From IMG/VR virus record IMGVR_UViG_3300030085_002431, positions 186,001-250,000 of that record: a stretch of 64,000 nucleotides of DNA. One strand, given 5' to 3'. The notes below the pieces were generated by a model that saw nothing but the letters and a program-made list of their open reading frames with translations, had not been told where the DNA came from and made no database searches. This document shows positions 38,779 to 62,695 of the stretch, piece after piece. The position numbers and the translations under genes are program-made. Numbering within the stretch: the first letter of the stretch is position 1; each line of letters opens with the position of its first letter.

Positions 38779-39621
38779 ATGAAACAATTTCCACTTAAAA
38801 CATGTCTGCGGTATCCAGGTGGCAAGAGTAAAGCACTGAAAACTCTTGCTCCCTGGTTTCCTAGTGACTTCAAAGAGTTTCGTGAACCATTTCTAGGTGG
38901 GGGTAGTATCTCCCTGCTCATCAGTCAGAACTATACGAGTTGCCCTATCTGGGTGAATGACAAGTATTTTTATTTGTATAATTTCTGGGTTCAACTTCGG
39001 GATAATGGTCTTGTATTAACAGAGAAACTGAGAAACATCAAACAAGAAGCTCTTGGTGATGATGAAGCACATAAAGAACTGTTCAAAAGGTATCAGAGTG
39101 ACATTGAAACTCTGGAACCCATTGAGCAGGCAGTTGCTTTCTTCGTGATGAATAAGTGTTCTTATTCTGGTTTGACTGAGAACTCCACTTTCTCTGTTCA
39201 GGCATCACGTTCTAACTTCTCTCTTGTTGGTATTGATAAACTGCCAAAGTATTCTTATATTATTAGAAACTGGAAGATTACTAACATTGACTATGCTGAA
39301 GTAATGAATGCTCCAGGTGAAGATGCTTTTGTATTCCTCGACCCTCCTTACGACATTAAAGACTTTCTTTATGGTACTGGTCGTAAACTTCATAGTTCTT
39401 TCAGTCATGAAAGGTTTGCTGATGATGTGGACTCGTGCCCGCATCGGTTCATGATTACATATAACGTGAATGACTGGTTGTTGAACCGTTACAAGGAGTA
39501 TAATCTCAATGAATGGAAACTCCGTTATTCAATGGTACACAGGGGTCAGAAGGGCACACAGGACAATGTGAAGACTGAATTGCTGGTTACTAACTATGAC
39601 CTGCCTGAGGTTGAAGTATAA
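38779..39621 (+). CDS. dam: DNA adenine methyltransferase (D12/Dam family)
   Basis: LRYPGGKS, EPFLGGGS, VND, FLDPPY. Confidence 0.9.
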   Translation: MKQFPLKTCLRYPGGKSKALKTLAPWFPSDFKEFREPFLGGGSISLLISQNYTSCPIWVNDKYFYLYNFWVQLRDNGLVLTEKLRNIKQEALGDDEAHKELFKRYQSDIETLEPIEQAVAFFVMNKCSYSGLTENSTFSVQASRSNFSLVGIDKLPKYSYIIRNWKITNIDYAEVMNAPGEDAFVFLDPPYDIKDFLYGTGRKLHSSFSHERFADDVDSCPHRFMITYNVNDWLLNRYKEYNLNEWKLRYSMVHRGQKGTQDNVKTELLVTNYDLPEVEV

Positions 39622-44302: not shown

Positions 44303-44304
44303 AG

Positions 44305-44545
44305 TGTTCAAGAGGTTGCGAAGTCTGTTGTTTTGGACAGGGGTTCGATTCCCCTCACCTCCATTCATGGGGGTGCCATGGTTTCGACAGGGCAAAAAGG
44401 TCGTAATTGTTGACGGGACATAAACATAGATGCAAACACATCTGAAACCGCAGCAAATAACATTGTTGCATTCTCCCGCAGCACCGTTGCTGCCTGAATG
44501 GGGGATGGGGGATAAGTCTTCCTTCTAATCCAATAGACTCTTGGG
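44305..44545 (+). ncRNA. ssrA: Circularly permuted (two-piece) tmRNA, cyanobacterial type
   Basis: T arm GGGGTTCGATTCCCC plus CACCTCCA (to 44363) precedes the 5' piece GGGGGTG..GGTTTCGAC (from 44369); G3:U70; tag ORF 44453-44497 ANNIVAFSRSTVAA*. Confidence 0.9.
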
Positions 44546-44565
44546 GGTGAGATGCCCCTCTTTTT
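44543..44565 (+). terminator. Intrinsic terminator after tmRNA
   Basis: GGGGGT-gaga-TGCCCCT followed by CTTTTT. Confidence 0.7.
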
Positions 44566-44606
44566 GTATAAATACTCCAGAGTTAATTAAACTTAGGATA
44601 CTTTTT

Positions 44607-48361: not shown

Positions 48362-48392
48362 TAATTAGTAGGGGTTAATTACCCCTCTATTT

Positions 48393-48466
48393 GTCTTGTT
48401 AGCTCAGATGGATAGAGCAACTGCCTTCTAAGCAGTCGGTCGAAGGTTCGAGTCCTTCACAAGACG
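48393..48466 (+). tRNA. tRNA-Arg(UCU)
   Basis: GTCTTGT/ACAAGAC; loop CTTCTAA. Confidence 0.92.
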
Positions 48467-48481
48467 TTATTTTTTAGAAAG

Positions 48482-52170: not shown

Positions 52171-52228
52171 GTGCCACCTGAGGTGGTGTCCACTACCCTG
52201 CCCATTGCCGTGGGTGGGGTGCTATATT
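52171..52228 (+). promoter_or_regulatory. Palindrome-linked promoter with stem-loop (copy 12)
   Basis: GTGCCA-N10-TGTCCA; ACCCTGCCCA/TGGGTGGGGT; TGcTATATT. Confidence 0.7.
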
Positions 52229-52252
52229 TGTTTCACAAACGAGGTCAAACGA

Positions 52253-53488
52253 TTGTTCACACTTCTCCCCTACCAGCAACGTGCCCTCGATGCAGTGCAA
52301 ACTAATCGCAAGGGTTCTGTATTTGTTCCTACTGGTGGTGGCAAAACTGTTATCATGATGGAAGATGCAAAGCAACGTATTGCACGGGCATCTAAACCCC
52401 TCACCTTCCTGATTGTTGCTCCTCGCATTCTCCTCGCAAACCAACTTTGTGGTGAGTTTGAAGAGTACCTAGATAATAAAGATATTCACTATATGCACTG
52501 CCATAGTGGAGAAACTCACCACTTCAAGAGTACAAATCCAGAACTCATCAAACTGTTTGCAAATACTGCAAAAGTTGGTGGTGAGCATTGCTTCATTTTT
52601 ACTACCTACAATTCTATTCATAAAGTCAATGATTCAAAGATTGACGTTGATGTTGTTTACTTTGACGAAGCACATCACTGCGTCAAGAAAAACAACTTTG
52701 TGGGTATTGCTCAGACTAGTGCAGACGCAAATAATTCTTATTTCTTTACTGCTACTCCTAAGTATCATGGTGGAGTTGAATCCATGAACAATACCTCTGT
52801 TTATGGTAACAACATCATCTCTATTCCTGCTCAAGAATTGATTGATGCAGGTAGCATTATTCCCCCTAAAGTTGTATCCTATGAATCACAAGACACCCGC
52901 AGTCGTGAAAATGCTGCGTGGGTCGATGGTAAGAATGTCATTGGCATTTTGCGTGGGATTACTGACACCGATGCTCCTAAAGTTCTTGTTGCATCTCCAA
53001 GCAGCAAGTGCATCTGGGAAATGTTCACTGAAACCGATGTTCTTATTCAACTGAAAGACATGGGTTACACCATCATGCACATCACATCTAAGCATGGTGC
53101 TTACATCGACAAAACCAAAGTTTCCCGTGAAGTATTCTTTGAGAAGATGTCTGAGTTCGGTGCTGACCCTGATAAAAAGTTCATTGTCTTCCACTATTCT
53201 ATTCTGTCCGAAGGTATGAACGTGCATGGTCTGACTCATTGCATCATGCTCCGCAATCTTCCTGTGATTGAGATGGCACAGACTGTCGGTCGTGTTATCC
53301 GTATGCACCGAGATGACCGCAAAGCAATCGCAGAAGGTAAAATGAAAGCAGGTGAGTTTGCTTTCTATAAGAAACCCTGTGGTCACGTTGTTATTCCTAC
53401 CAACAACAACTATGGAGACCGTATCATCAAGCAACTGCAAAACGTTGTTGATACTATCTTTGTCAAGGGTGAAGTTCCGATTGCATAA
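52253..53488 (+). CDS. SF2 DEAD/DEAH-box helicase (type III restriction Res-like)
   Basis: L.PYQ; PTGGGKT; DEAHH; TATP; LSEG; QTVGRVIR; TTG start with SD gagg. Confidence 0.88.
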   Translation: MFTLLPYQQRALDAVQTNRKGSVFVPTGGGKTVIMMEDAKQRIARASKPLTFLIVAPRILLANQLCGEFEEYLDNKDIHYMHCHSGETHHFKSTNPELIKLFANTAKVGGEHCFIFTTYNSIHKVNDSKIDVDVVYFDEAHHCVKKNNFVGIAQTSADANNSYFFTATPKYHGGVESMNNTSVYGNNIISIPAQELIDAGSIIPPKVVSYESQDTRSRENAAWVDGKNVIGILRGITDTDAPKVLVASPSSKCIWEMFTETDVLIQLKDMGYTIMHITSKHGAYIDKTKVSREVFFEKMSEFGADPDKKFIVFHYSILSEGMNVHGLTHCIMLRNLPVIEMAQTVGRVIRMHRDDRKAIAEGKMKAGEFAFYKKPCGHVVIPTNNNYGDRIIKQLQNVVDTIFVKGEVPIA

Positions 53489-53513: not shown

Positions 53514-53678
53514 ATGCCATTTACGAAGAAGTTTCCCCGTTCTGGGGATACTAAGCACATTAGAGTTCCAGTTGTTTATTCTGACTTAGTGTTAGAGTTA
53601 ATGGAAGTCTATGACAGTAAGTTTGAGATAGATAAGGGCAAACATTTACTCCGAAAGTATATCAACTCAGTCAAGTAG
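53514..53678 (+). CDS. Small ribbon-helix-helix-like protein
   Basis: TKHIRVP beta-ribbon followed by helices. Confidence 0.45.
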   Translation: MPFTKKFPRSGDTKHIRVPVVYSDLVLELMEVYDSKFEIDKGKHLLRKYINSVK

Positions 53679-53679
53679 T

Positions 53680-53738
53680 ATGCCAGTCCTGGAACTGGTC
53701 TAATCCCCCTTGCCCTTCTTAGGGTGAGGGGTTATAGT
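53680..53738 (+). promoter_or_regulatory. Palindrome-linked promoter with stem-loop (copy 13)
   Basis: ATGCCA-N10-TGGTCT; CCCCTTGCCCT/AGGGTGAGGGG; TTGCCC-17-TATAGT. Confidence 0.7.
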
Positions 53739-53758
53739 GTATTCATACACAGGAACGC

Positions 53759-54349
53759 ATGAAACTTACCACCAACGAAGTTGCAGCAAAACTGAAAGTT
53801 ACTGATTTTTCTGCATTTCAAAAACCTGGCAAGAATAAGGGTGCCCGTGGTCAACTGCTGGAGACTGCTCTGGGTATTAGTAATTCCTCTGACTTGACTG
53901 ATTTGATTGACGGTGAACTGAAATCTTTCACTCAGGGAGAATCTATTGCTGTCACTCAAATTAAACATTGCCTGCATGAAATTATCAGGGATGAAGTTGG
54001 ATTTTATGATAGCAAAGTTGGTGAGAAACTGAGACAAACCATTTATGTTGGTTTCACACGTTCTAATGATTATATTGGAACTGCAACAATTAGTTTCGAC
54101 AGTTGCCCTAAGCATTTCTGTGAACTCGCAGAAGATTATGAATATATTTGTAATGAAATCCGCAATCGTTACAATAACAGTCAAGAACTGAGTACGATTA
54201 CTGGTCCTAATAAATTGCTTCAAATCCGTACTAAAGCAAGCAAGAATAAGTGGGGACAATACACTCCTTTGGTGTATAATGATAAAGTTATGAAAGATAA
54301 AAATATGGCATTTTATCTCTGCACACAATTCGGTAAAACTATTATTTGA
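53759..54349 (+). CDS. MutH/Sau3AI-family endonuclease
   Basis: KNKG..GQLLE..LG...S....D...GELK; E...VT; EDYE.I; LQIRTK; AFY, all diagnostic of the MutH/Sau3AI fold. Confidence 0.8.
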   Translation: MKLTTNEVAAKLKVTDFSAFQKPGKNKGARGQLLETALGISNSSDLTDLIDGELKSFTQGESIAVTQIKHCLHEIIRDEVGFYDSKVGEKLRQTIYVGFTRSNDYIGTATISFDSCPKHFCELAEDYEYICNEIRNRYNNSQELSTITGPNKLLQIRTKASKNKWGQYTPLVYNDKVMKDKNMAFYLCTQFGKTII

Positions 54350-54353
54350 GAAC

Positions 54354-55175
54354 ATGAGAAAACCATTCCTTAAATGGGCAGGTGGTAAAACTAAAGTCCT
54401 GCAACATATTTTGCCCCTTATTGGTAATGTTGACCACTTCATTGAACCATTCGCAGGTTCTATGTCTGTGGGGTTAAATGTACCTGCAAAAGTGTGTGTT
54501 CTGAATGATGTTAATGGGCACATCATCCAACTTTACCAGCATCTTATTGGTGAGGGTGAGGACTTTATTAACTACTGCGAATCCTTTTTTGTGGATGGTA
54601 ATGTATCTGATTTGTATTATGAGAGAAGAACACTATTCAATGAAACTGAGGATAGTAGAGAAAGGTCTGCATTGTTTGTTTATTTGAATCGACATGGATT
54701 CAATGGACTGACAAGATATAATAAGAGTGGTGAATATAATGTTCCTTTTGGTAAGTATAAAAAACCATACTTTCCGAGAGACGAAATGATGGAATTTAGA
54801 TATAATATGCAGAGAAAAATGCTTCTTAGAATGACAGCATTTGATTTTGCAGACCCAGTGTTGTATAAGAATCTTTCTGCTGGTAGTGTAGTTTATTGTG
54901 ACCCACCTTATATTCCGTTGAATGAAACTTCCAACTTCACGGCATATTCTACTGATGGGTTTACTAATAACGACCAAATTAGATTGAAGCAACTTGCACT
55001 TAATCTGAGAAGACAGGGAGCAAAAGTAATCATTAGTAATCACGATGTACCTGCTGCCCGTGAATTGTACTCTGACGCATCTAGAATCATCGAAATTAAC
55101 GTGAGTCGCAGTGTGAGTGCTAAGGGTGGTTCTAGAGGTAAAGTGGGGGAAATCCTAGCAGTTTATGAACCCTGA
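54354..55175 (+). CDS. dam: Dam-like DNA adenine methyltransferase (likely GATC)
   Basis: FLKWAGGK, EPFAGS, YLNRHGFNGL.RYN..G.YNVPFG.YK, YCDPPY; close to enterobacterial Dam motifs. Confidence 0.92.
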   Translation: MRKPFLKWAGGKTKVLQHILPLIGNVDHFIEPFAGSMSVGLNVPAKVCVLNDVNGHIIQLYQHLIGEGEDFINYCESFFVDGNVSDLYYERRTLFNETEDSRERSALFVYLNRHGFNGLTRYNKSGEYNVPFGKYKKPYFPRDEMMEFRYNMQRKMLLRMTAFDFADPVLYKNLSAGSVVYCDPPYIPLNETSNFTAYSTDGFTNNDQIRLKQLALNLRRQGAKVIISNHDVPAARELYSDASRIIEINVSRSVSAKGGSRGKVGEILAVYEP

Positions 55176-55176
55176 T

Positions 55177-55233
55177 GTGCCACATGTTCTAGTGGCACAG
55201 TAAATGAGCACAGACCCCAAAATTTGCTATTCT
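55177..55233 (+). promoter_or_regulatory. Palindrome-linked early promoter (copy 14)
   Basis: Perfect GTGCCA-N10-TGGCAC; TGcTATTCT; near-identical to 58740-58793. Confidence 0.75.
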
Positions 55234-55259: not shown

Positions 55260-55445
55260 ATGGTCACTAAAACACTCACATTTGAAGAAGAGACCGATTT
55301 GGTTTCATCCCTTTACTCTGCCGTTGCTTATTTTAAGCAGTTGGAAGAAGAATCCATCAATAACAAAGATTATTGGAAGAAACGGATACAAGAAGCACAA
55401 AACGTTGCTGATAAATTTTACGCAGAACTGAAGGCATCACTGTGA
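55260..55445 (+). CDS. Hypothetical protein
   Basis: First gene after the cassette. Confidence 0.55.
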   Translation: MVTKTLTFEEETDLVSSLYSAVAYFKQLEEESINNKDYWKKRIQEAQNVADKFYAELKASL

Positions 55446-58724: not shown

Positions 58725-58739
58725 GTCTAGTGCTCATGT

Positions 58740-58807
58740 GTGACACATGTACTAGTGGCACAGTAAATGAGCACAGACCCCAAAATCTGCTATCATTACA
58801 AAGTAAT
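58740..58807 (+). promoter_or_regulatory. Palindrome-linked early promoter (copy 17)
   Basis: GTGACA-N10-TGGCAC; TGcTATCAT; ATTAC-aaa-GTAAT. Confidence 0.75.
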
Positions 58808-61684: not shown

Positions 61685-62680
61685 AGTGCATCTGTGGAAA
61701 AACTTGTGGAAAAACAATCATTAAATAAATGGTTAAAAAAACATAGTTGCGTGTTTTATGTTTTCCACAGAAGGTGTTGAAAAAGTATATAAATACCCTG
61801 TTTTATCTTCGTTATTATGTTCTAAACCCCTCTGGTTATTGTTATCTAAGACCGCAGTATATCATGAGTTGACAAAAAAGTCAAGAAAATTTCTGAAACT
61901 TTTTGAGTCTCACACATATTATTCGTCTGATATAAGACTCAACAAAACTGTAAGATTTTATGAGTCCTCTGAGTCTCACTGATTCGTCCATTCTTATGCG
62001 AAACTCACTGGTCTCAGAGAACTTATGAGTCTCAGACCACTCGAAAATTCGTCCACTGGACACAGTAGTCTCATTGTTTTGCGTGTAGACTACTAGGGTG
62101 GTTTTGAGGGAGGGAAGTATTACACAGCACTATGTGATAATAATTACACAGTGAGTTTGTATTAGTTTTCCACAGGCAAAGTATTAGTTATCCACAGACC
62201 CTGTGGAAAAGTATTATAAACCTGTGGAAAACTTTATACCTGGGGGAGGGGTTTATATTACTAATACACAGTGAGTTTCTGATTGTTTATAAACACCAGT
62301 ACTACTCACAAACACTCCGAGGGTTTCTAATACTTTACAGATTGCCCTTCGTGTATTATAATAAAACAGTGTTGTGTAATTATAATTAAGTAGTACTGTT
62401 TAATTCTTATACCCACGGGGGGGTTATTAATAACAATTACTTAGTGAGTTCGTTATTGTTATTATACAGCACTAAATGACAGTAACCCTCGGGGGGGTTA
62501 GGTTTTTTATAAAAACCGATGGGTCCCCCTAACCTACAAAAGTATGCATCCACGAGACCTTTACCCCGCATATAAAAATTTTTCCGAGGGGAAAAACGGG
62601 TCTCCGAGGTCCGTTCAAGAAAAAAAATTCCGAGGGGAAAAAATAGGTTAAAAACCCTGTGAGTGCTATATAACGGAGAA
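61685..62680. other. Gene-free repeat-rich region, candidate replication origin with DnaA-box cluster
   Basis: TT(A/T)TCCACA or its complement at 61693, 61705, 61761, 62166, 62188, 62202, 62223; GAGTCTCA repeats; AT-rich tracts. Confidence 0.6.
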
Positions 62681-62695
62681 TAAAAATTTCTAAGA

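What the first reader, a model, noticed from the sequence alone, without database searches (positions are those of the whole stretch)
53680..55175. Early two-gene cassette: stand-alone MutH/Sau3AI-like nuclease plus Dam-like methylase
Seen: a 196 aa MutH-fold ORF 4 bp upstream of a methylase with enterobacterial-Dam-like motifs, bracketed by two promoter cassettes. Established: MutH cuts at GATC sites lacking adenine methylation, and Dam methylates GATC. Inference: a phage-borne restriction-modification-like system that attacks unmethylated DNA of co-infecting phages or the host while protecting itself, or a minimal strand-discrimination system. No mutS or mutL is present in the window.
Basis: partly seen in the sequence, partly recalled or inferred. 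Interest (0 to 1): 0.7.

Follow-up and report, generated by a model that had tools for sequence, protein, structure and literature searches.

The report
Cyanophage GATC nuclease–methylase pair
A marine cyanophage carries a MutH-type nuclease and a Dam methylase that most likely work as the phage's own restriction-modification pair: they mark phage DNA at GATC and cut unmarked host or rival-phage DNA.

Summary
A 196-aa ORF (53759-54349) lies 4 nt upstream of a 273-aa Dam methylase (54354-55175), between two repeated stem-loop/promoter cassettes. The window belongs to a 250.6-kb T4-like cyanophage.

The nuclease is a true MutH homologue. It keeps every catalytic residue and the GATC- and methyl-sensing residues. 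It is neither canonical MutH nor Sau3AI, and it lacks the His/His/Glu latch through which MutL activates MutH. The methylase keeps E. coli Dam's GATC-contact residues.

Comparative evidence favours a restriction-modification-like module:
- The nuclease is monophyletic in cyanophages, and 24 of 25 loci place it at or one gene from one of two different adenine-methylase families, which swapped at least twice. One phage fuses the two genes.
- All 25 isolate records with the nuclease also have Dam; Dam occurs without it.
- Bacterial relatives sit in R-M loci.
- GATC is depleted in carriers (O/E 0.13-0.25 where the genes are linked, 0.66 unlinked). It is not depleted in non-carriers on the same hosts (0.86-0.97).
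- Hosts mostly lack Dam and have one GATC per ~110 bp.
- The phage has no MutS or MutL.

No biochemistry exists. The target (host DNA or rival phages) and behaviour on hemimethylated DNA are inferred.

The parts
53680..53758 (+). Upstream intergenic cassette (PeSL-like). It holds a short stem-loop at 53683-53698, a C-run/G-run inverted repeat at 53705-53731, a -35-like TTGCCC at 53710-53715 and a -10-like TATAGT at 53733-53738, 20 nt before the ATG.
   Evidence: Sequence; promoter scan. The 3' half (TATAGTGTATTCATACAC) is conserved in related loci L006-L008. It belongs to a cassette family seen in at least 9 gaps of the window.
53759..54349 (+). MutH-like PD-(D/E)XK endonuclease, 196 aa, predicted to be specific for GATC and sensitive to N6-adenine methylation.
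   Evidence: The residue map is K27/E35/D48/E53/K55/K90 = E. coli MutH K48/E56/D70/E77/K79/K116, and Q155/R157/K159/F185/Y186 = Q182/R184/K186/F211/Y212. All are invariant in 120 phage homologues.
54350..54353 (+). 4-nt spacer (GAAC) between the nuclease stop codon and the methylase ATG. There is no cassette here, so the two genes are read as one transcription unit.
54354..55175 (+). Dam-family (D12 class, alpha group) N6-adenine DNA methyltransferase, 273 aa, predicted target GATC.
   Evidence: The DPPY motif is present. The EcoDam DNA-contact residues K9, N120, L122, R124, P134 and Y138 are identical, and Y119 is F (alignment; residue roles from PMC4417163).
55176..55259 (+). Downstream intergenic cassette (PeSL-like). 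It holds an 8-bp-stem hairpin TGTGCCAC-N8-GTGGCACA at 55176-55199, then GAGCACAGACCCC and TGCTATTCTATAGA before the next ATG at 55260.
   Evidence: A 55-nt copy at 58739-58793 is 95% identical (family D3). Metatranscriptome contigs break at 55176 and 55231, as expected for a repeated element.
53517..53678 (+). Small ORF (53 aa) between the core helicase and the cassette. Whether it belongs to the module is uncertain.
   Evidence: It is conserved together with the nuclease in the three loci that share the window's gene order (L006-L008, 65-73% identity). No Pfam or PHROG match.

Best explanation
The two genes form a phage-encoded, GATC-specific restriction-modification-like module that sits in a variable region of a T4-like cyanophage.

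The Dam enzyme methylates the adenine of GATC on phage DNA, so packaged and incoming genomes are marked. The MutH-like enzyme is most likely a monomeric PD-(D/E)XK nuclease. It would nick or cut GATC sites that lack the methyl mark and would not need MutL.

Its substrates would be two kinds of DNA. One is the host chromosome, which has about one GATC per 110 bp in a host lineage that mostly has no Dam. The other is any co-infecting phage whose GATC sites are unmethylated. The outcome would be host shut-off with nucleotide recycling, exclusion of rival phages, or both.

The phage lowers the danger to its own freshly replicated DNA by carrying about four- to eight-fold fewer GATC sites than expected.

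Shown here: the homology, conserved residues, gene linkage, distribution and site statistics. Inferred: GATC specificity of both enzymes, methyl sensitivity, independence from MutL, the target DNA and the timing.
For: (1) Homology and active site. The profile hits MutH at E 3e-16 over its full length, and the AF2 model matches MutH-DNA complexes. Catalytic residues E56/D70/E77/K79/K116 and DNA-reading residues Q182/R184/K186/F211/Y212 of MutH are all present, and all are invariant in 120 phage homologues of 65-99% identity. Tyr212 is reported as important for sensing methylation status (PMC3848065). Dam-insensitive Sau3AI has Ser at that position.

(2) Methylase. Its three best groups of solved relatives are E. 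coli Dam, DpnM and T4 Dam, which from my own knowledge are GATC methylases. The contact residues are conserved.

(3) Linkage. In 25 loci the nuclease is next to a D12 Dam in 10. In 12 it is directly followed, with a 4-nt overlap, by a PF05869 'Dam' methylase; in 1 that methylase is one gene away; in 1 (S-CAM7) the Dam lies 32 kb away. L008 has the window's gene order with PF05869 in the place of Dam. On the nuclease tree the phage clade is one group (99/97) and the partner type changes at least twice. In S-8S29 the Dam stop codon is lost and the frame reads through into the nuclease, giving a 492-aa fusion ORF.

(4) Asymmetry typical of R-M. All 25 phage records with the nuclease also have Dam, while 64 cyanophage records have this Dam.

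(5) Bacterial relatives. Four of six looked up lie beside adenine methylases, three of them D12 class. One has D12 plus N6_N4 methylases together, a two-methylase layout that I recall (own knowledge) from the DpnII system. The other two lie beside Type I HsdR genes.

(6) GATC O/E.
- Carriers with linked genes: own genome 0.23, S-RIM8 0.13, WH25-B 0.20, S-8S29 0.25.
- Carrier with unlinked genes: S-CAM7 0.66.
- Dam only: 0.60 and 0.61.
- Non-carriers S-PM2, S-TIM4 and S-SSM2: 0.88, 0.86, 0.97. S-TIM4 and S-SSM2 were isolated on WH8102, as were carriers S-8S29 and S-H25.
- CCGG is near zero in the eight Synechococcus myoviruses of about 170-190 kb sampled and in this genome, but less depleted in S-CAM7 (0.34).

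(7) Hosts. WH7803 and four other picocyanobacteria have no D12 methylase. In 201 genomes of that family, 28 have any D12 hit (about 12 strong), 4 have PF05869 and 2 have a DpnII-type nuclease. Host GATC O/E is 0.99-1.04.

(8) No MutS, MutL or PF05869 was found in the phage genome.

(9) Precedent. Chlorovirus and marseillevirus GATC R-M systems are used for host-DNA recycling or virus exclusion (PMC7253447; PMC7248222). Cyanomyoviruses lack the T4 genes denA, denB and ndd, and an undescribed host-DNA degradation route was postulated for them (PMC2984593).
Against: No enzyme activity, methylome or infection data exist for any member.

Canonical MutH is nearly inactive without MutL and prefers hemimethylated sites (PMC3848065; bioRxiv 10.64898/2026.04.21.719898). 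If the phage enzyme kept those properties it would be a poor restriction enzyme and would nick the phage's own new strands.

The GATC specificity of the PF05869 partners is assumed from the family's characterised members, not shown.

The GATC-avoidance comparison rests on 10 genomes, several of them closely related. S-CAM7, a carrier, is only mildly depleted (0.66).

Five metagenomic contigs with the nuclease (12-35% complete) show no D12 Dam, although all five carry PF05869.

A second D12-class methylase of unknown specificity is present in this genome and in all five nuclease-less cyanomyoviruses searched (S-PM2, S-TIM4, S-SSM2, ACG-2014b, S-RIM12). If it also made GmATC, rival phages would be immune.

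Host GATC methylation by some other methylase class was not excluded.
Confidence: 0.7

Rival explanations
1. Portable strand discrimination. The phage Dam marks parental phage strands, and the MutH-like enzyme nicks the new strand at hemimethylated GATC. Host MutS and MutL activate it, giving the phage methyl-directed mismatch repair in a host that has no MutH.
For: The protein is closer to MutH than to any restriction enzyme. It keeps Tyr212 and Lys116. Annotation pipelines call it MutH. The remaining GATC density, about 1 per 1.15 kb, would still serve repair.
Against: No MutS or MutL was found in the phage. The latch that transmits MutL binding in E. coli MutH (His112, His115, Glu68; bioRxiv 10.64898/2026.04.21.719898) is Lys86, Glu/Gln89 and Leu46 here. 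The score against the MutH equivalog model is 24 bits against a cut-off of 243, and no family member comes close. Bacterial relatives sit in R-M loci, not repair loci. The MutH-like family was not found in 201 host-family genomes, so host MutL has no history with such a partner. Strong GATC avoidance is not expected if the sites were useful.
Confidence: 0.07
2. The two genes are functionally unrelated neighbours in a gene-shuffling hot spot. Dam is an orphan methylase used for anti-restriction or gene regulation. The nuclease has another job, such as repair, recombination or homing, or another specificity.
For: The region is hyperplastic and flanked by mobile-looking cassettes. Dam occurs without the nuclease in many cyanophages. 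In S-CAM7 the two genes are 32 kb apart. The neighbouring helicase is simply a core gene, present in 419 records.
Against: The nuclease is never found without an adenine methylase in complete genomes. It is adjacent to one of two different methylase families in 22 of 25 loci, translationally overlapped in 12 of them, and fused in one phage. The MutH GATC-reading residues are invariant. GATC avoidance tracks the nuclease more than it tracks Dam alone. GATC restriction enzymes of the DpnII type are rare in the host family, 2 of 201, so anti-restriction value is small.
Confidence: 0.1
3. The nuclease works on the phage's own DNA. It nicks transiently hemimethylated GATC sites behind the fork to create 3' ends that feed the recombination-dependent replication typical of T4-like phages.
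For: Canonical MutH cleaves hemimethylated sites about 10-fold faster than unmethylated ones (PMC3848065). The pair is co-transcribed.
Against: Selection has removed about 75-87% of expected GATC sites from carriers with linked genes. That is the opposite of what a useful cis-acting site would show. Most cyanomyoviruses replicate without this gene. Bacterial relatives are R-M genes.
Confidence: 0.06

Closest known systems
MutH, the methyl-directed mismatch-repair endonuclease of gamma-proteobacteria (PDB 2AOR/2AOQ, 2AZO)
   Same: Same fold over its full length and a single domain of about 200 aa. Identical catalytic set (E56, D70, E77, K79, K116). Identical LQIR-K and FY motifs that read GATC and the adenine methyl group.
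   Different: About 20% identity, far below the family cut-off. It is 33 residues shorter than the 229-residue E. coli MutH, with two 6-residue deletions against its own family profile. It lacks the H112/H115/E68 latch used for activation by MutL. It is encoded by a lytic phage without MutS or MutL. It is paired with a methylase in one operon, and its bacterial relatives lie in R-M loci.
Sau3AI, a Type II restriction endonuclease cutting GATC (PDB 4PXG)
   Same: A MutH-like catalytic domain used for restriction at GATC, which shows that this fold can serve as a restriction enzyme.
   Different: Sau3AI is about 490 aa, with a second, non-catalytic MutH-like effector domain. It has Ser where MutH and the phage enzyme have Tyr212, and it lacks the IR-K motif. 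From my own knowledge, it is insensitive to Dam methylation and is partnered with a C5-cytosine methylase.
DpnII/MboI-type GATC restriction-modification systems (Dam-like DpnM, with or without DpnA, plus the nuclease)
   Same: Same logic: a D12 Dam-family methylase protects GATC, and the nuclease cuts unmethylated GATC. One bacterial relative of the phage nuclease sits beside D12 plus N6_N4 methylases, which I recall (own knowledge) as the DpnII layout. DpnM is the second-best solved relative of the phage Dam.
   Different: The nuclease family is unrelated (PF04556, against the MutH fold). Those systems are cellular defence systems; this one is a phage gene pair.
Virus-encoded GATC R-M systems: chlorovirus PBCV-1 R.CviAI/M.CviAI and Marseilleviridae mel_015/mel_016
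   Same: A lytic virus carries both nuclease and methylase for GATC. The viral genome is m6A-protected. Proposed roles are host-DNA recycling (chloroviruses) or exclusion of unmethylated co-infecting viruses (marseilleviruses). In melbournevirus the nuclease is transcribed before the methylase (PMC7253447; PMC7248222).
   Different: Those are viruses of eukaryotes. Whether their CviAI-type nuclease is related to MutH was not tested here. The cyanophage module is interchangeable with respect to its methylase family.
T4 host-DNA degradation: denA/denB nucleases with hydroxymethylcytosine as the self mark
   Same: Works like it in principle: a DNA modification lets the phage's nucleases tell host DNA from phage DNA.
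   Different: No homology. The mark is m6A at a 4-bp site rather than global hmC. Cyanomyoviruses lack denA, denB and ndd (PMC2984593).
PeSL (promoter-early stem-loop) cassettes of T4-type phages
   Same: Short repeated intergenic units combining a stem-loop and a sigma-70-like promoter. They flank variable genes in hyperplastic regions (PMC2839356; PMC4122927; window).
   Different: The sequences differ from the published coliphage and vibriophage PeSLs. The term 'cyanophage' does not occur in the 2014 paper. Activity is not tested.

Membership tests
Canonical MutH (NCBIfam NF003458 / TIGR02248 equivalogs) | Score above the curated equivalog cut-off | tested here: not met
   24.4 bits against a cut-off of 243, and 17.8 against 229.9. 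The best of 57 family members reaches only E 1.2e-17.
Canonical MutH (NCBIfam NF003458 / TIGR02248 equivalogs) | PD-(D/E)XK active site E56, D70, E77, K79 plus K116 | tested here: met
   E35, D48, E53, K55 and K90 align to them. All are invariant in 120 phage homologues.
Canonical MutH (NCBIfam NF003458 / TIGR02248 equivalogs) | GATC-reading and methyl-sensing residues (Q182/R184/K186, F211/Y212) | tested here: met
   LQIRTK and AFYL align with LQIRPK and GFYL and are invariant. The role of Tyr212 is taken from PMC3848065.
Canonical MutH (NCBIfam NF003458 / TIGR02248 equivalogs) | MutL-responsive allosteric latch His112/His115-Glu68 | tested here: not met
   The aligned residues are K86, E89 (Q/E/A/K across the family) and L46/T47. 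The latch is described in bioRxiv 10.64898/2026.04.21.719898.
Canonical MutH (NCBIfam NF003458 / TIGR02248 equivalogs) | Works with MutS and MutL encoded in the same genome | tested here: not met
   No MutS_V or MutL match in the complete phage genome, with positive controls ringing in the named control genomes. Use of the host proteins was not tested.
Canonical MutH (NCBIfam NF003458 / TIGR02248 equivalogs) | Nicks the unmethylated strand of hemimethylated GATC | not testable with these tools
   Needs an enzyme assay.
Sau3AI-family Type II restriction endonuclease (NF040973) | Two tandem MutH-like domains, about 490 aa, with a model hit | tested here: not met
   A single domain of 196 aa. The window protein has no NF040973 hit; 4 of 57 family members hit it weakly.
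Type II restriction-modification system (GATC) | Nuclease and methylase genes linked and co-inherited | tested here: met
   A 4-nt gap here. A methylase is adjacent in 22 of 25 loci and within one gene in 23. All 25 isolate genomes with the nuclease have Dam.
Type II restriction-modification system (GATC) | Both enzymes recognise the same site, and methylation blocks cleavage | not testable with these tools
   Only inferred from conserved contact residues of both proteins.
Type II restriction-modification system (GATC) | Carrier genome avoids the recognition site | tested here: met
   GATC O/E is 0.13-0.25 in the four carriers with linked genes, 0.66 in S-CAM7 (unlinked), and 0.86-0.97 in three non-carriers. 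The sample is small and partly related.
Dam family, D12-class N6-adenine methyltransferase (TIGR00571 / PF02086) | Score above the curated cut-offs | tested here: met
   TIGR00571 246.4 bits against 114.85; PF02086 205.3 against 22. The enterobacterial equivalog PRK10904 is not reached (259 against 441), so this is a family member, not the E. coli orthologue.
Dam family, D12-class N6-adenine methyltransferase (TIGR00571 / PF02086) | DPPY catalytic motif and the GATC-contact residues of EcoDam (K9, Y119, N120, L122, R124, P134, Y138) | tested here: met
   DPPY is present. Six of the seven contacts are identical and Y119 is F (alignment; residue roles from PMC4417163).
PeSL regulatory cassettes of T4-type phages | Repeated intergenic stem-loop plus early-promoter unit flanking variable genes | tested here: inconclusive
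   The repeat family and its architecture are shown. Promoter-like hits are not above chance in the region scan. One metatranscriptome contig starts at 53726. Activity is untested.

The most novel reading that the evidence does not exclude
The phage imports methyl-directed strand discrimination into a MutH-less, Dam-less cyanobacterium. Its Dam marks parental phage strands, and its MutH-like nickase couples to host MutS/MutL, or acts alone at replication forks, to direct repair or recombination of newly made phage DNA. That would make it a portable two-gene fidelity module rather than a weapon.
Probability: 0.06. Interest if true: 0.85.

Novelty: new variant of a known kind. Interest (0 to 1): 0.55.

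Why it matters
T4 degrades its host's DNA with denA and denB, and protects itself with hydroxymethylcytosine. Cyanomyoviruses have neither, and how they treat host DNA is an acknowledged gap (PMC2984593). A GATC nuclease with a methyl self-mark would give a subset of abundant marine phages exactly that self/non-self discrimination.

It is directly testable in cultured pairs. S-RIM8 carries the module; S-PM2 does not and is a candidate non-carrier control, though its record names no host.

The family is large: at least 978 clusters at 90% identity in metagenomes. It would also be a natural single-domain MutH that probably needs no MutL, which is of interest as a methyl-sensitive GATC nicking enzyme.

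Interchange of two methylase families around a constant nuclease, and GATC avoidance that follows carriage of the nuclease, together give a clean example of a virus shaping its own genome around a weapon it carries.

Tried and rejected
- DNA search of the region against the phage collection (megablast): no match.
- Single-sequence search of the nuclease against PDB sequences: only chance hits. A family profile was needed.
The single protein was used instead.
- The helicase as a third component: rejected. It is a core gene in 419 cyanophage records, so its proximity reflects an insertion hot spot.
- Dam search in five metagenomic contigs with the nuclease: none found, but the contigs are only 12-35% complete, and all five carry PF05869.
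A host handle was obtained through the phage psbA gene instead.
- The MutH-like family in 201 host-family genomes: nothing found, but without a positive control in that search.
- Literature searches for a cyanophage MutH or a cyanophage-encoded R-M system: no description found in the library searched.
- Metatranscriptome contigs: one 213-nt contig over 53726-53938, and pieces over the methylase at 92-95% identity. This is too thin, and DNA carry-over is possible, so it was not used as evidence of timing.
- One distant relative (P0153) lay on a contig too short to be informative.
- No complex prediction was run, because the report makes no binding claim that it could decide.
Full report
**What is there**

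The window is bases 186001-250000 of a 250,613-bp virus record that CheckV rates 100% complete. Its G+C content is 38%, and nearly all genes lie on the + strand. Protein matches place it among the T4-like cyanophages (Kyanoviridae). The nuclease's relatives in isolates are all Synechococcus myoviruses. The neighbouring helicase is shared with 419 cyanophage records. The phage psbA is 93-96% identical to those of Synechococcus and Cyanobium genomes. The sequence recurs at about 100% word identity in marine metagenomes of several studies.

At the reported place there are two ORFs on the + strand: 53759-54349 (196 aa) and 54354-55175 (273 aa), with 4 nt between them. Upstream lie a core helicase (52205-53488) and a 53-aa ORF (53517-53678).

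**The nuclease**

Single-sequence evidence is thin:
- Pfam gives only MvaI_BcnI at E 0.01.
- The NCBIfam MutH models give E 1.3e-5 over the full length, but 24 bits against a cut-off of 243.
- PHROGs files it in a family of unknown function.
- phmmer against PDB sequences finds nothing.

The family is large. There are 978 clusters at 90% identity at E below 1e-3, mostly from marine metagenomes, and some are named MutH by JGI. There are 190 representatives at 50% identity.

A profile of 57 diverse members hits H. influenzae MutH (E 2.9e-16) and E. coli MutH (4.3e-15) over the whole length. It then hits Sau3AI (2.4e-5) and BcnI (1.2e-3). None of the 57 reaches the MutH equivalog cut-off, so this is a separate branch of the MutH/Sau3AI fold. 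The AlphaFold model is confident (pLDDT 96.4, pTM 0.91). Its best Foldseek matches are the MutH-DNA complexes 2AOR and 2AOQ (probability 1.0, TM 0.65), followed by Sau3AI, MvaI and BcnI.

Residue mapping through the profile gives:

| Window residue | E. coli MutH residue |
|---|---|
| K27 | K48 |
| E35 | E56 |
| D48 | D70 |
| E53 | E77 |
| K55 | K79 |
| K90 | K116 |
| Q155 / R157 / K159 | Q182 / R184 / K186 |
| F185 / Y186 | F211 / Y212 |

All of these are invariant in 120 phage homologues that are only 65-99% identical overall. A recent cryo-EM preprint describes E56 as a metal ligand and K116 as the residue that positions the attacking water. Tyr212 is reported as important for sensing methylation status (PMC3848065). 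Sau3AI, which by my own knowledge ignores Dam methylation, has Ser at that position and lacks the IR-K motif.

The His112/His115-Glu68 latch tells a different story. MutL binding releases an inhibitory loop through this latch. Here the aligned residues are K86, E89 (variable across the family) and L46/T47. I infer a GATC-specific, methyl-sensitive enzyme that is probably not gated by MutL. This step is inference from alignment only.

**The methylase**

- PF02086 matches at E 1.7e-60.
- TIGR00571 (dam) scores 246 bits against a cut-off of 115.
- The enterobacterial equivalog is not reached (259 against 441).

The best solved relatives are E. coli Dam (3e-64), DpnM (5e-42) and T4 Dam (6e-14), which from my own knowledge are GATC enzymes. 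The DPPY motif is present. The EcoDam contacts K9, N120, L122, R124, P134 and Y138 are identical, and the intercalating Y119 is Phe (residue roles from PMC4417163).

**The cassettes**

Both flanking gaps belong to a repeated intergenic family seen at least nine times between 45 and 61 kb. Each unit has a stem-loop, a run of C, and TGCTAT/TATAGT about 25 nt before the next start codon. The downstream cassette has a 95% copy at 58739-58793. The 3' half of the upstream one is conserved in related phages.

This is the architecture of the PeSL elements described for other T4-type phages (PMC2839356; PMC4122927). Promoter activity is not shown. The sigma-70 scan of the region is not above chance. 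The only RNA evidence is one short metatranscriptome contig beginning at 53726. No cassette separates the two genes, so I read them as one operon.

**Comparative evidence for a functional pair**

I compared 25 loci: the window, four isolate genomes and 20 IMG/VR contigs.
- In 10 loci the nuclease is next to a D12 Dam, in either order.
- In 12 loci it is followed, with a 4-nt overlap, by a 166-189-aa methylase of a different family (PF05869 'Dam', E 1e-15 to 5e-20).
- In one locus that small methylase is one gene further on.
- In S-CAM7 the D12 Dam lies 32 kb away, next to the helicase.

L008 has exactly the window's gene order, but with the small methylase in the Dam position. On a tree of the nucleases the phage sequences form one clade (99/97). 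The partner type changes at least twice on well-supported branches.

In S-8S29 the Dam stop codon is replaced and the frame runs through the spacer into the nuclease. This gives the 492-aa ORF annotated in GenBank.

All 25 isolate records with the nuclease also carry the D12 Dam. The Dam is found in 64 cyanophage records. The nuclease is therefore never seen alone, but the methylase is, which is the usual asymmetry of R-M genes.

The helicase is a core gene, so its proximity carries no functional weight.

I looked up six distant bacterial relatives:
- Four lie beside adenine methylases. One of these is flanked by D12 and N6_N4 methylases, a two-methylase layout I recall from DpnII. One is overlapped by a D12 methylase and fused to DUF6996/DUF6997.
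- Two lie beside Type I HsdR genes.

**Site statistics**

Against a second-order Markov expectation, GATC O/E values are as follows:

| Genome | Status | GATC O/E |
|---|---|---|
| This genome (217 observed, 956 expected) | nuclease + Dam, linked | 0.23 |
| S-RIM8 | nuclease + Dam, linked | 0.13 |
| WH25-B | nuclease + Dam, linked | 0.20 |
| S-8S29 | nuclease + Dam, linked | 0.25 |
| S-CAM7 | nuclease + Dam, unlinked | 0.66 |
| ACG-2014b, S-RIM12 | Dam only | 0.60, 0.61 |
| S-PM2, S-TIM4, S-SSM2 | no nuclease | 0.88, 0.86, 0.97 |

CCGG is almost absent from the eight Synechococcus myoviruses of about 170-190 kb sampled and from this genome (S-CAM7 0.34), and AGCT is low in the same genomes. 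GATC avoidance is therefore not part of a general palindrome avoidance.

Carriers and non-carriers share hosts: S-8S29 and S-H25 (carriers) and S-TIM4 and S-SSM2 (non-carriers) were all isolated on WH8102. DpnII-type nucleases are rare in the host family, 2 of 201 genomes. A host-imposed cause is therefore unlikely. The simplest reading is that the phage's own nuclease selects against its site.

The sample is small and partly related, so this is suggestive evidence, not proof.

**Hosts**

- Synechococcus WH7803 and four other picocyanobacterial genomes have no D12 methylase.
- Among 201 genomes of the same GTDB family, 28 have any D12 hit, about 12 of them strong.
- Four of the 201 have PF05869.
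- None has the MutH-like family (that search had no positive control).
- Host GATC O/E is 0.99-1.04. WH7803 has 2209 sites in 240 kb, about one per 109 bp. The phage has one per 1155 bp.

**Mechanism proposed**

Dam keeps the few phage GATC sites methylated. The nuclease attacks unmethylated GATC, which is abundant in host DNA and in cyanophages such as S-PM2.

Virus-encoded GATC R-M systems with these roles are known in chloroviruses (host-DNA recycling) and marseilleviruses (exclusion of unmethylated relatives; the nuclease is transcribed first) (PMC7253447; PMC7248222). Cyanomyoviruses lack the T4 genes denA, denB and ndd, and an undescribed route of host-DNA degradation has been postulated for them (PMC2984593).

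I put 0.7 on the R-M-like mechanism. Within it I cannot separate host degradation from phage exclusion.

The weak point is hemimethylated DNA. Canonical MutH prefers it. If the phage enzyme does too, it would nick the phage's own new strands until Dam catches up. That would fit the strong GATC avoidance, but it also keeps the repair and replication-priming rivals alive.

**Rivals**

- Methyl-directed repair using host MutS/MutL (0.07). It is disfavoured by the missing latch, the absence of phage MutS and MutL, the R-M contexts of relatives, and site avoidance.
- Unrelated neighbours (0.10). It is disfavoured by the methylase swapping, the overlap and the fusion.
- Self-nicking for replication (0.06). 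It is disfavoured by site avoidance and by the rarity of the gene among cyanomyoviruses.

**Novelty**

Annotation pipelines already label some members 'MutH'. I found no paper describing a cyanophage MutH-like nuclease or a cyanophage-encoded R-M pair in the library searched. Virus-borne R-M systems and MutH-fold restriction enzymes are both known. I therefore rate this a new variant of a known kind: a single-domain, probably MutL-independent MutH relative used with interchangeable Dam-type methylases by marine phages.

Noticed in passing
window 38779-39621 (+): A second D12-class adenine methylase (280 aa). Its best solved relative is 7M6B (E 3e-58), and it is only weakly similar to E. coli Dam (E 2e-4). 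The same type is present in S-PM2, S-TIM4 and S-SSM2, which lack the nuclease and show no GATC avoidance. Its specificity is unknown.
   Followed up: partly
whole genome G000 (window included): CCGG occurs once in 250.6 kb (146 expected). AGCT O/E is 0.33 and CGCG 0.24. CCGG is also near zero in the eight Synechococcus myoviruses of about 170-190 kb sampled, but 0.34 in S-CAM7, whatever the nuclease or Dam status.
   Followed up: partly
genome 210-250 kb = window about 24000-64000: GATC is even rarer in this hyperplastic, small-ORF region: 10 sites in about 40 kb, against 4-18 per 10 kb elsewhere. Neither gene of the pair contains GATC; the nearest sites are 52052 and 55593.
   Followed up: no
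L139 3397-4820 (ACG-2014b) and L140 3657-5080 (S-RIM12): Where S-RIM8 has Dam, the MutH-like gene and the helicase, these phages have Dam, a 144-aa PD-(D/E)XK nuclease (PF20472, E 2.7e-11; phrog_6124), a 303-aa ORF (phrog_5778) and the helicase. This may be a non-homologous nuclease in the same slot. GATC O/E there is 0.60.
   Followed up: partly
L003 3113-4591 (Synechococcus phage S-8S29): The Dam stop codon is lost and the 70-nt spacer is in frame, giving a 492-aa Dam-MutH-like fusion ORF as annotated in GenBank.
   Followed up: yes
window 53517-53678 (+): A 53-aa ORF between the helicase and the cassette. It is conserved only in loci with the window's gene order (L006-L008) and has no family match. 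By eye the sequence looks like a short strand followed by two helices, which was not tested. It could be a small DNA-binding regulator.
   Followed up: partly
window 45112, 50758, 52172, 53680, 55176, 55874, 57655, 58725, about 60540: A family of intergenic stem-loop plus promoter-like cassettes (PeSL-like) with several sub-types. Some pairs are 87-95% identical over 52-55 nt.
   Followed up: partly
window 61983-62695: A 713-nt stretch without ORFs. It carries repeated CACAGTGAGTT motifs, CCACAG/CTGTGG inverted motifs and several G-run/C-run hairpins. It may be an origin or another regulatory region.
   Followed up: no
window 44303-44606 and 48362-48481: Intergenic gaps containing tRNA-like T-arm sequences (GGTTCGATTCC, GGTTCGAGTCC). 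No tRNA scan was run.
   Followed up: no
L017 8684-9682: A 332-aa ORF with a weak DUF6551 match sits between the MutH-like gene and the PF05869 methylase in one metagenomic lineage.
   Followed up: no
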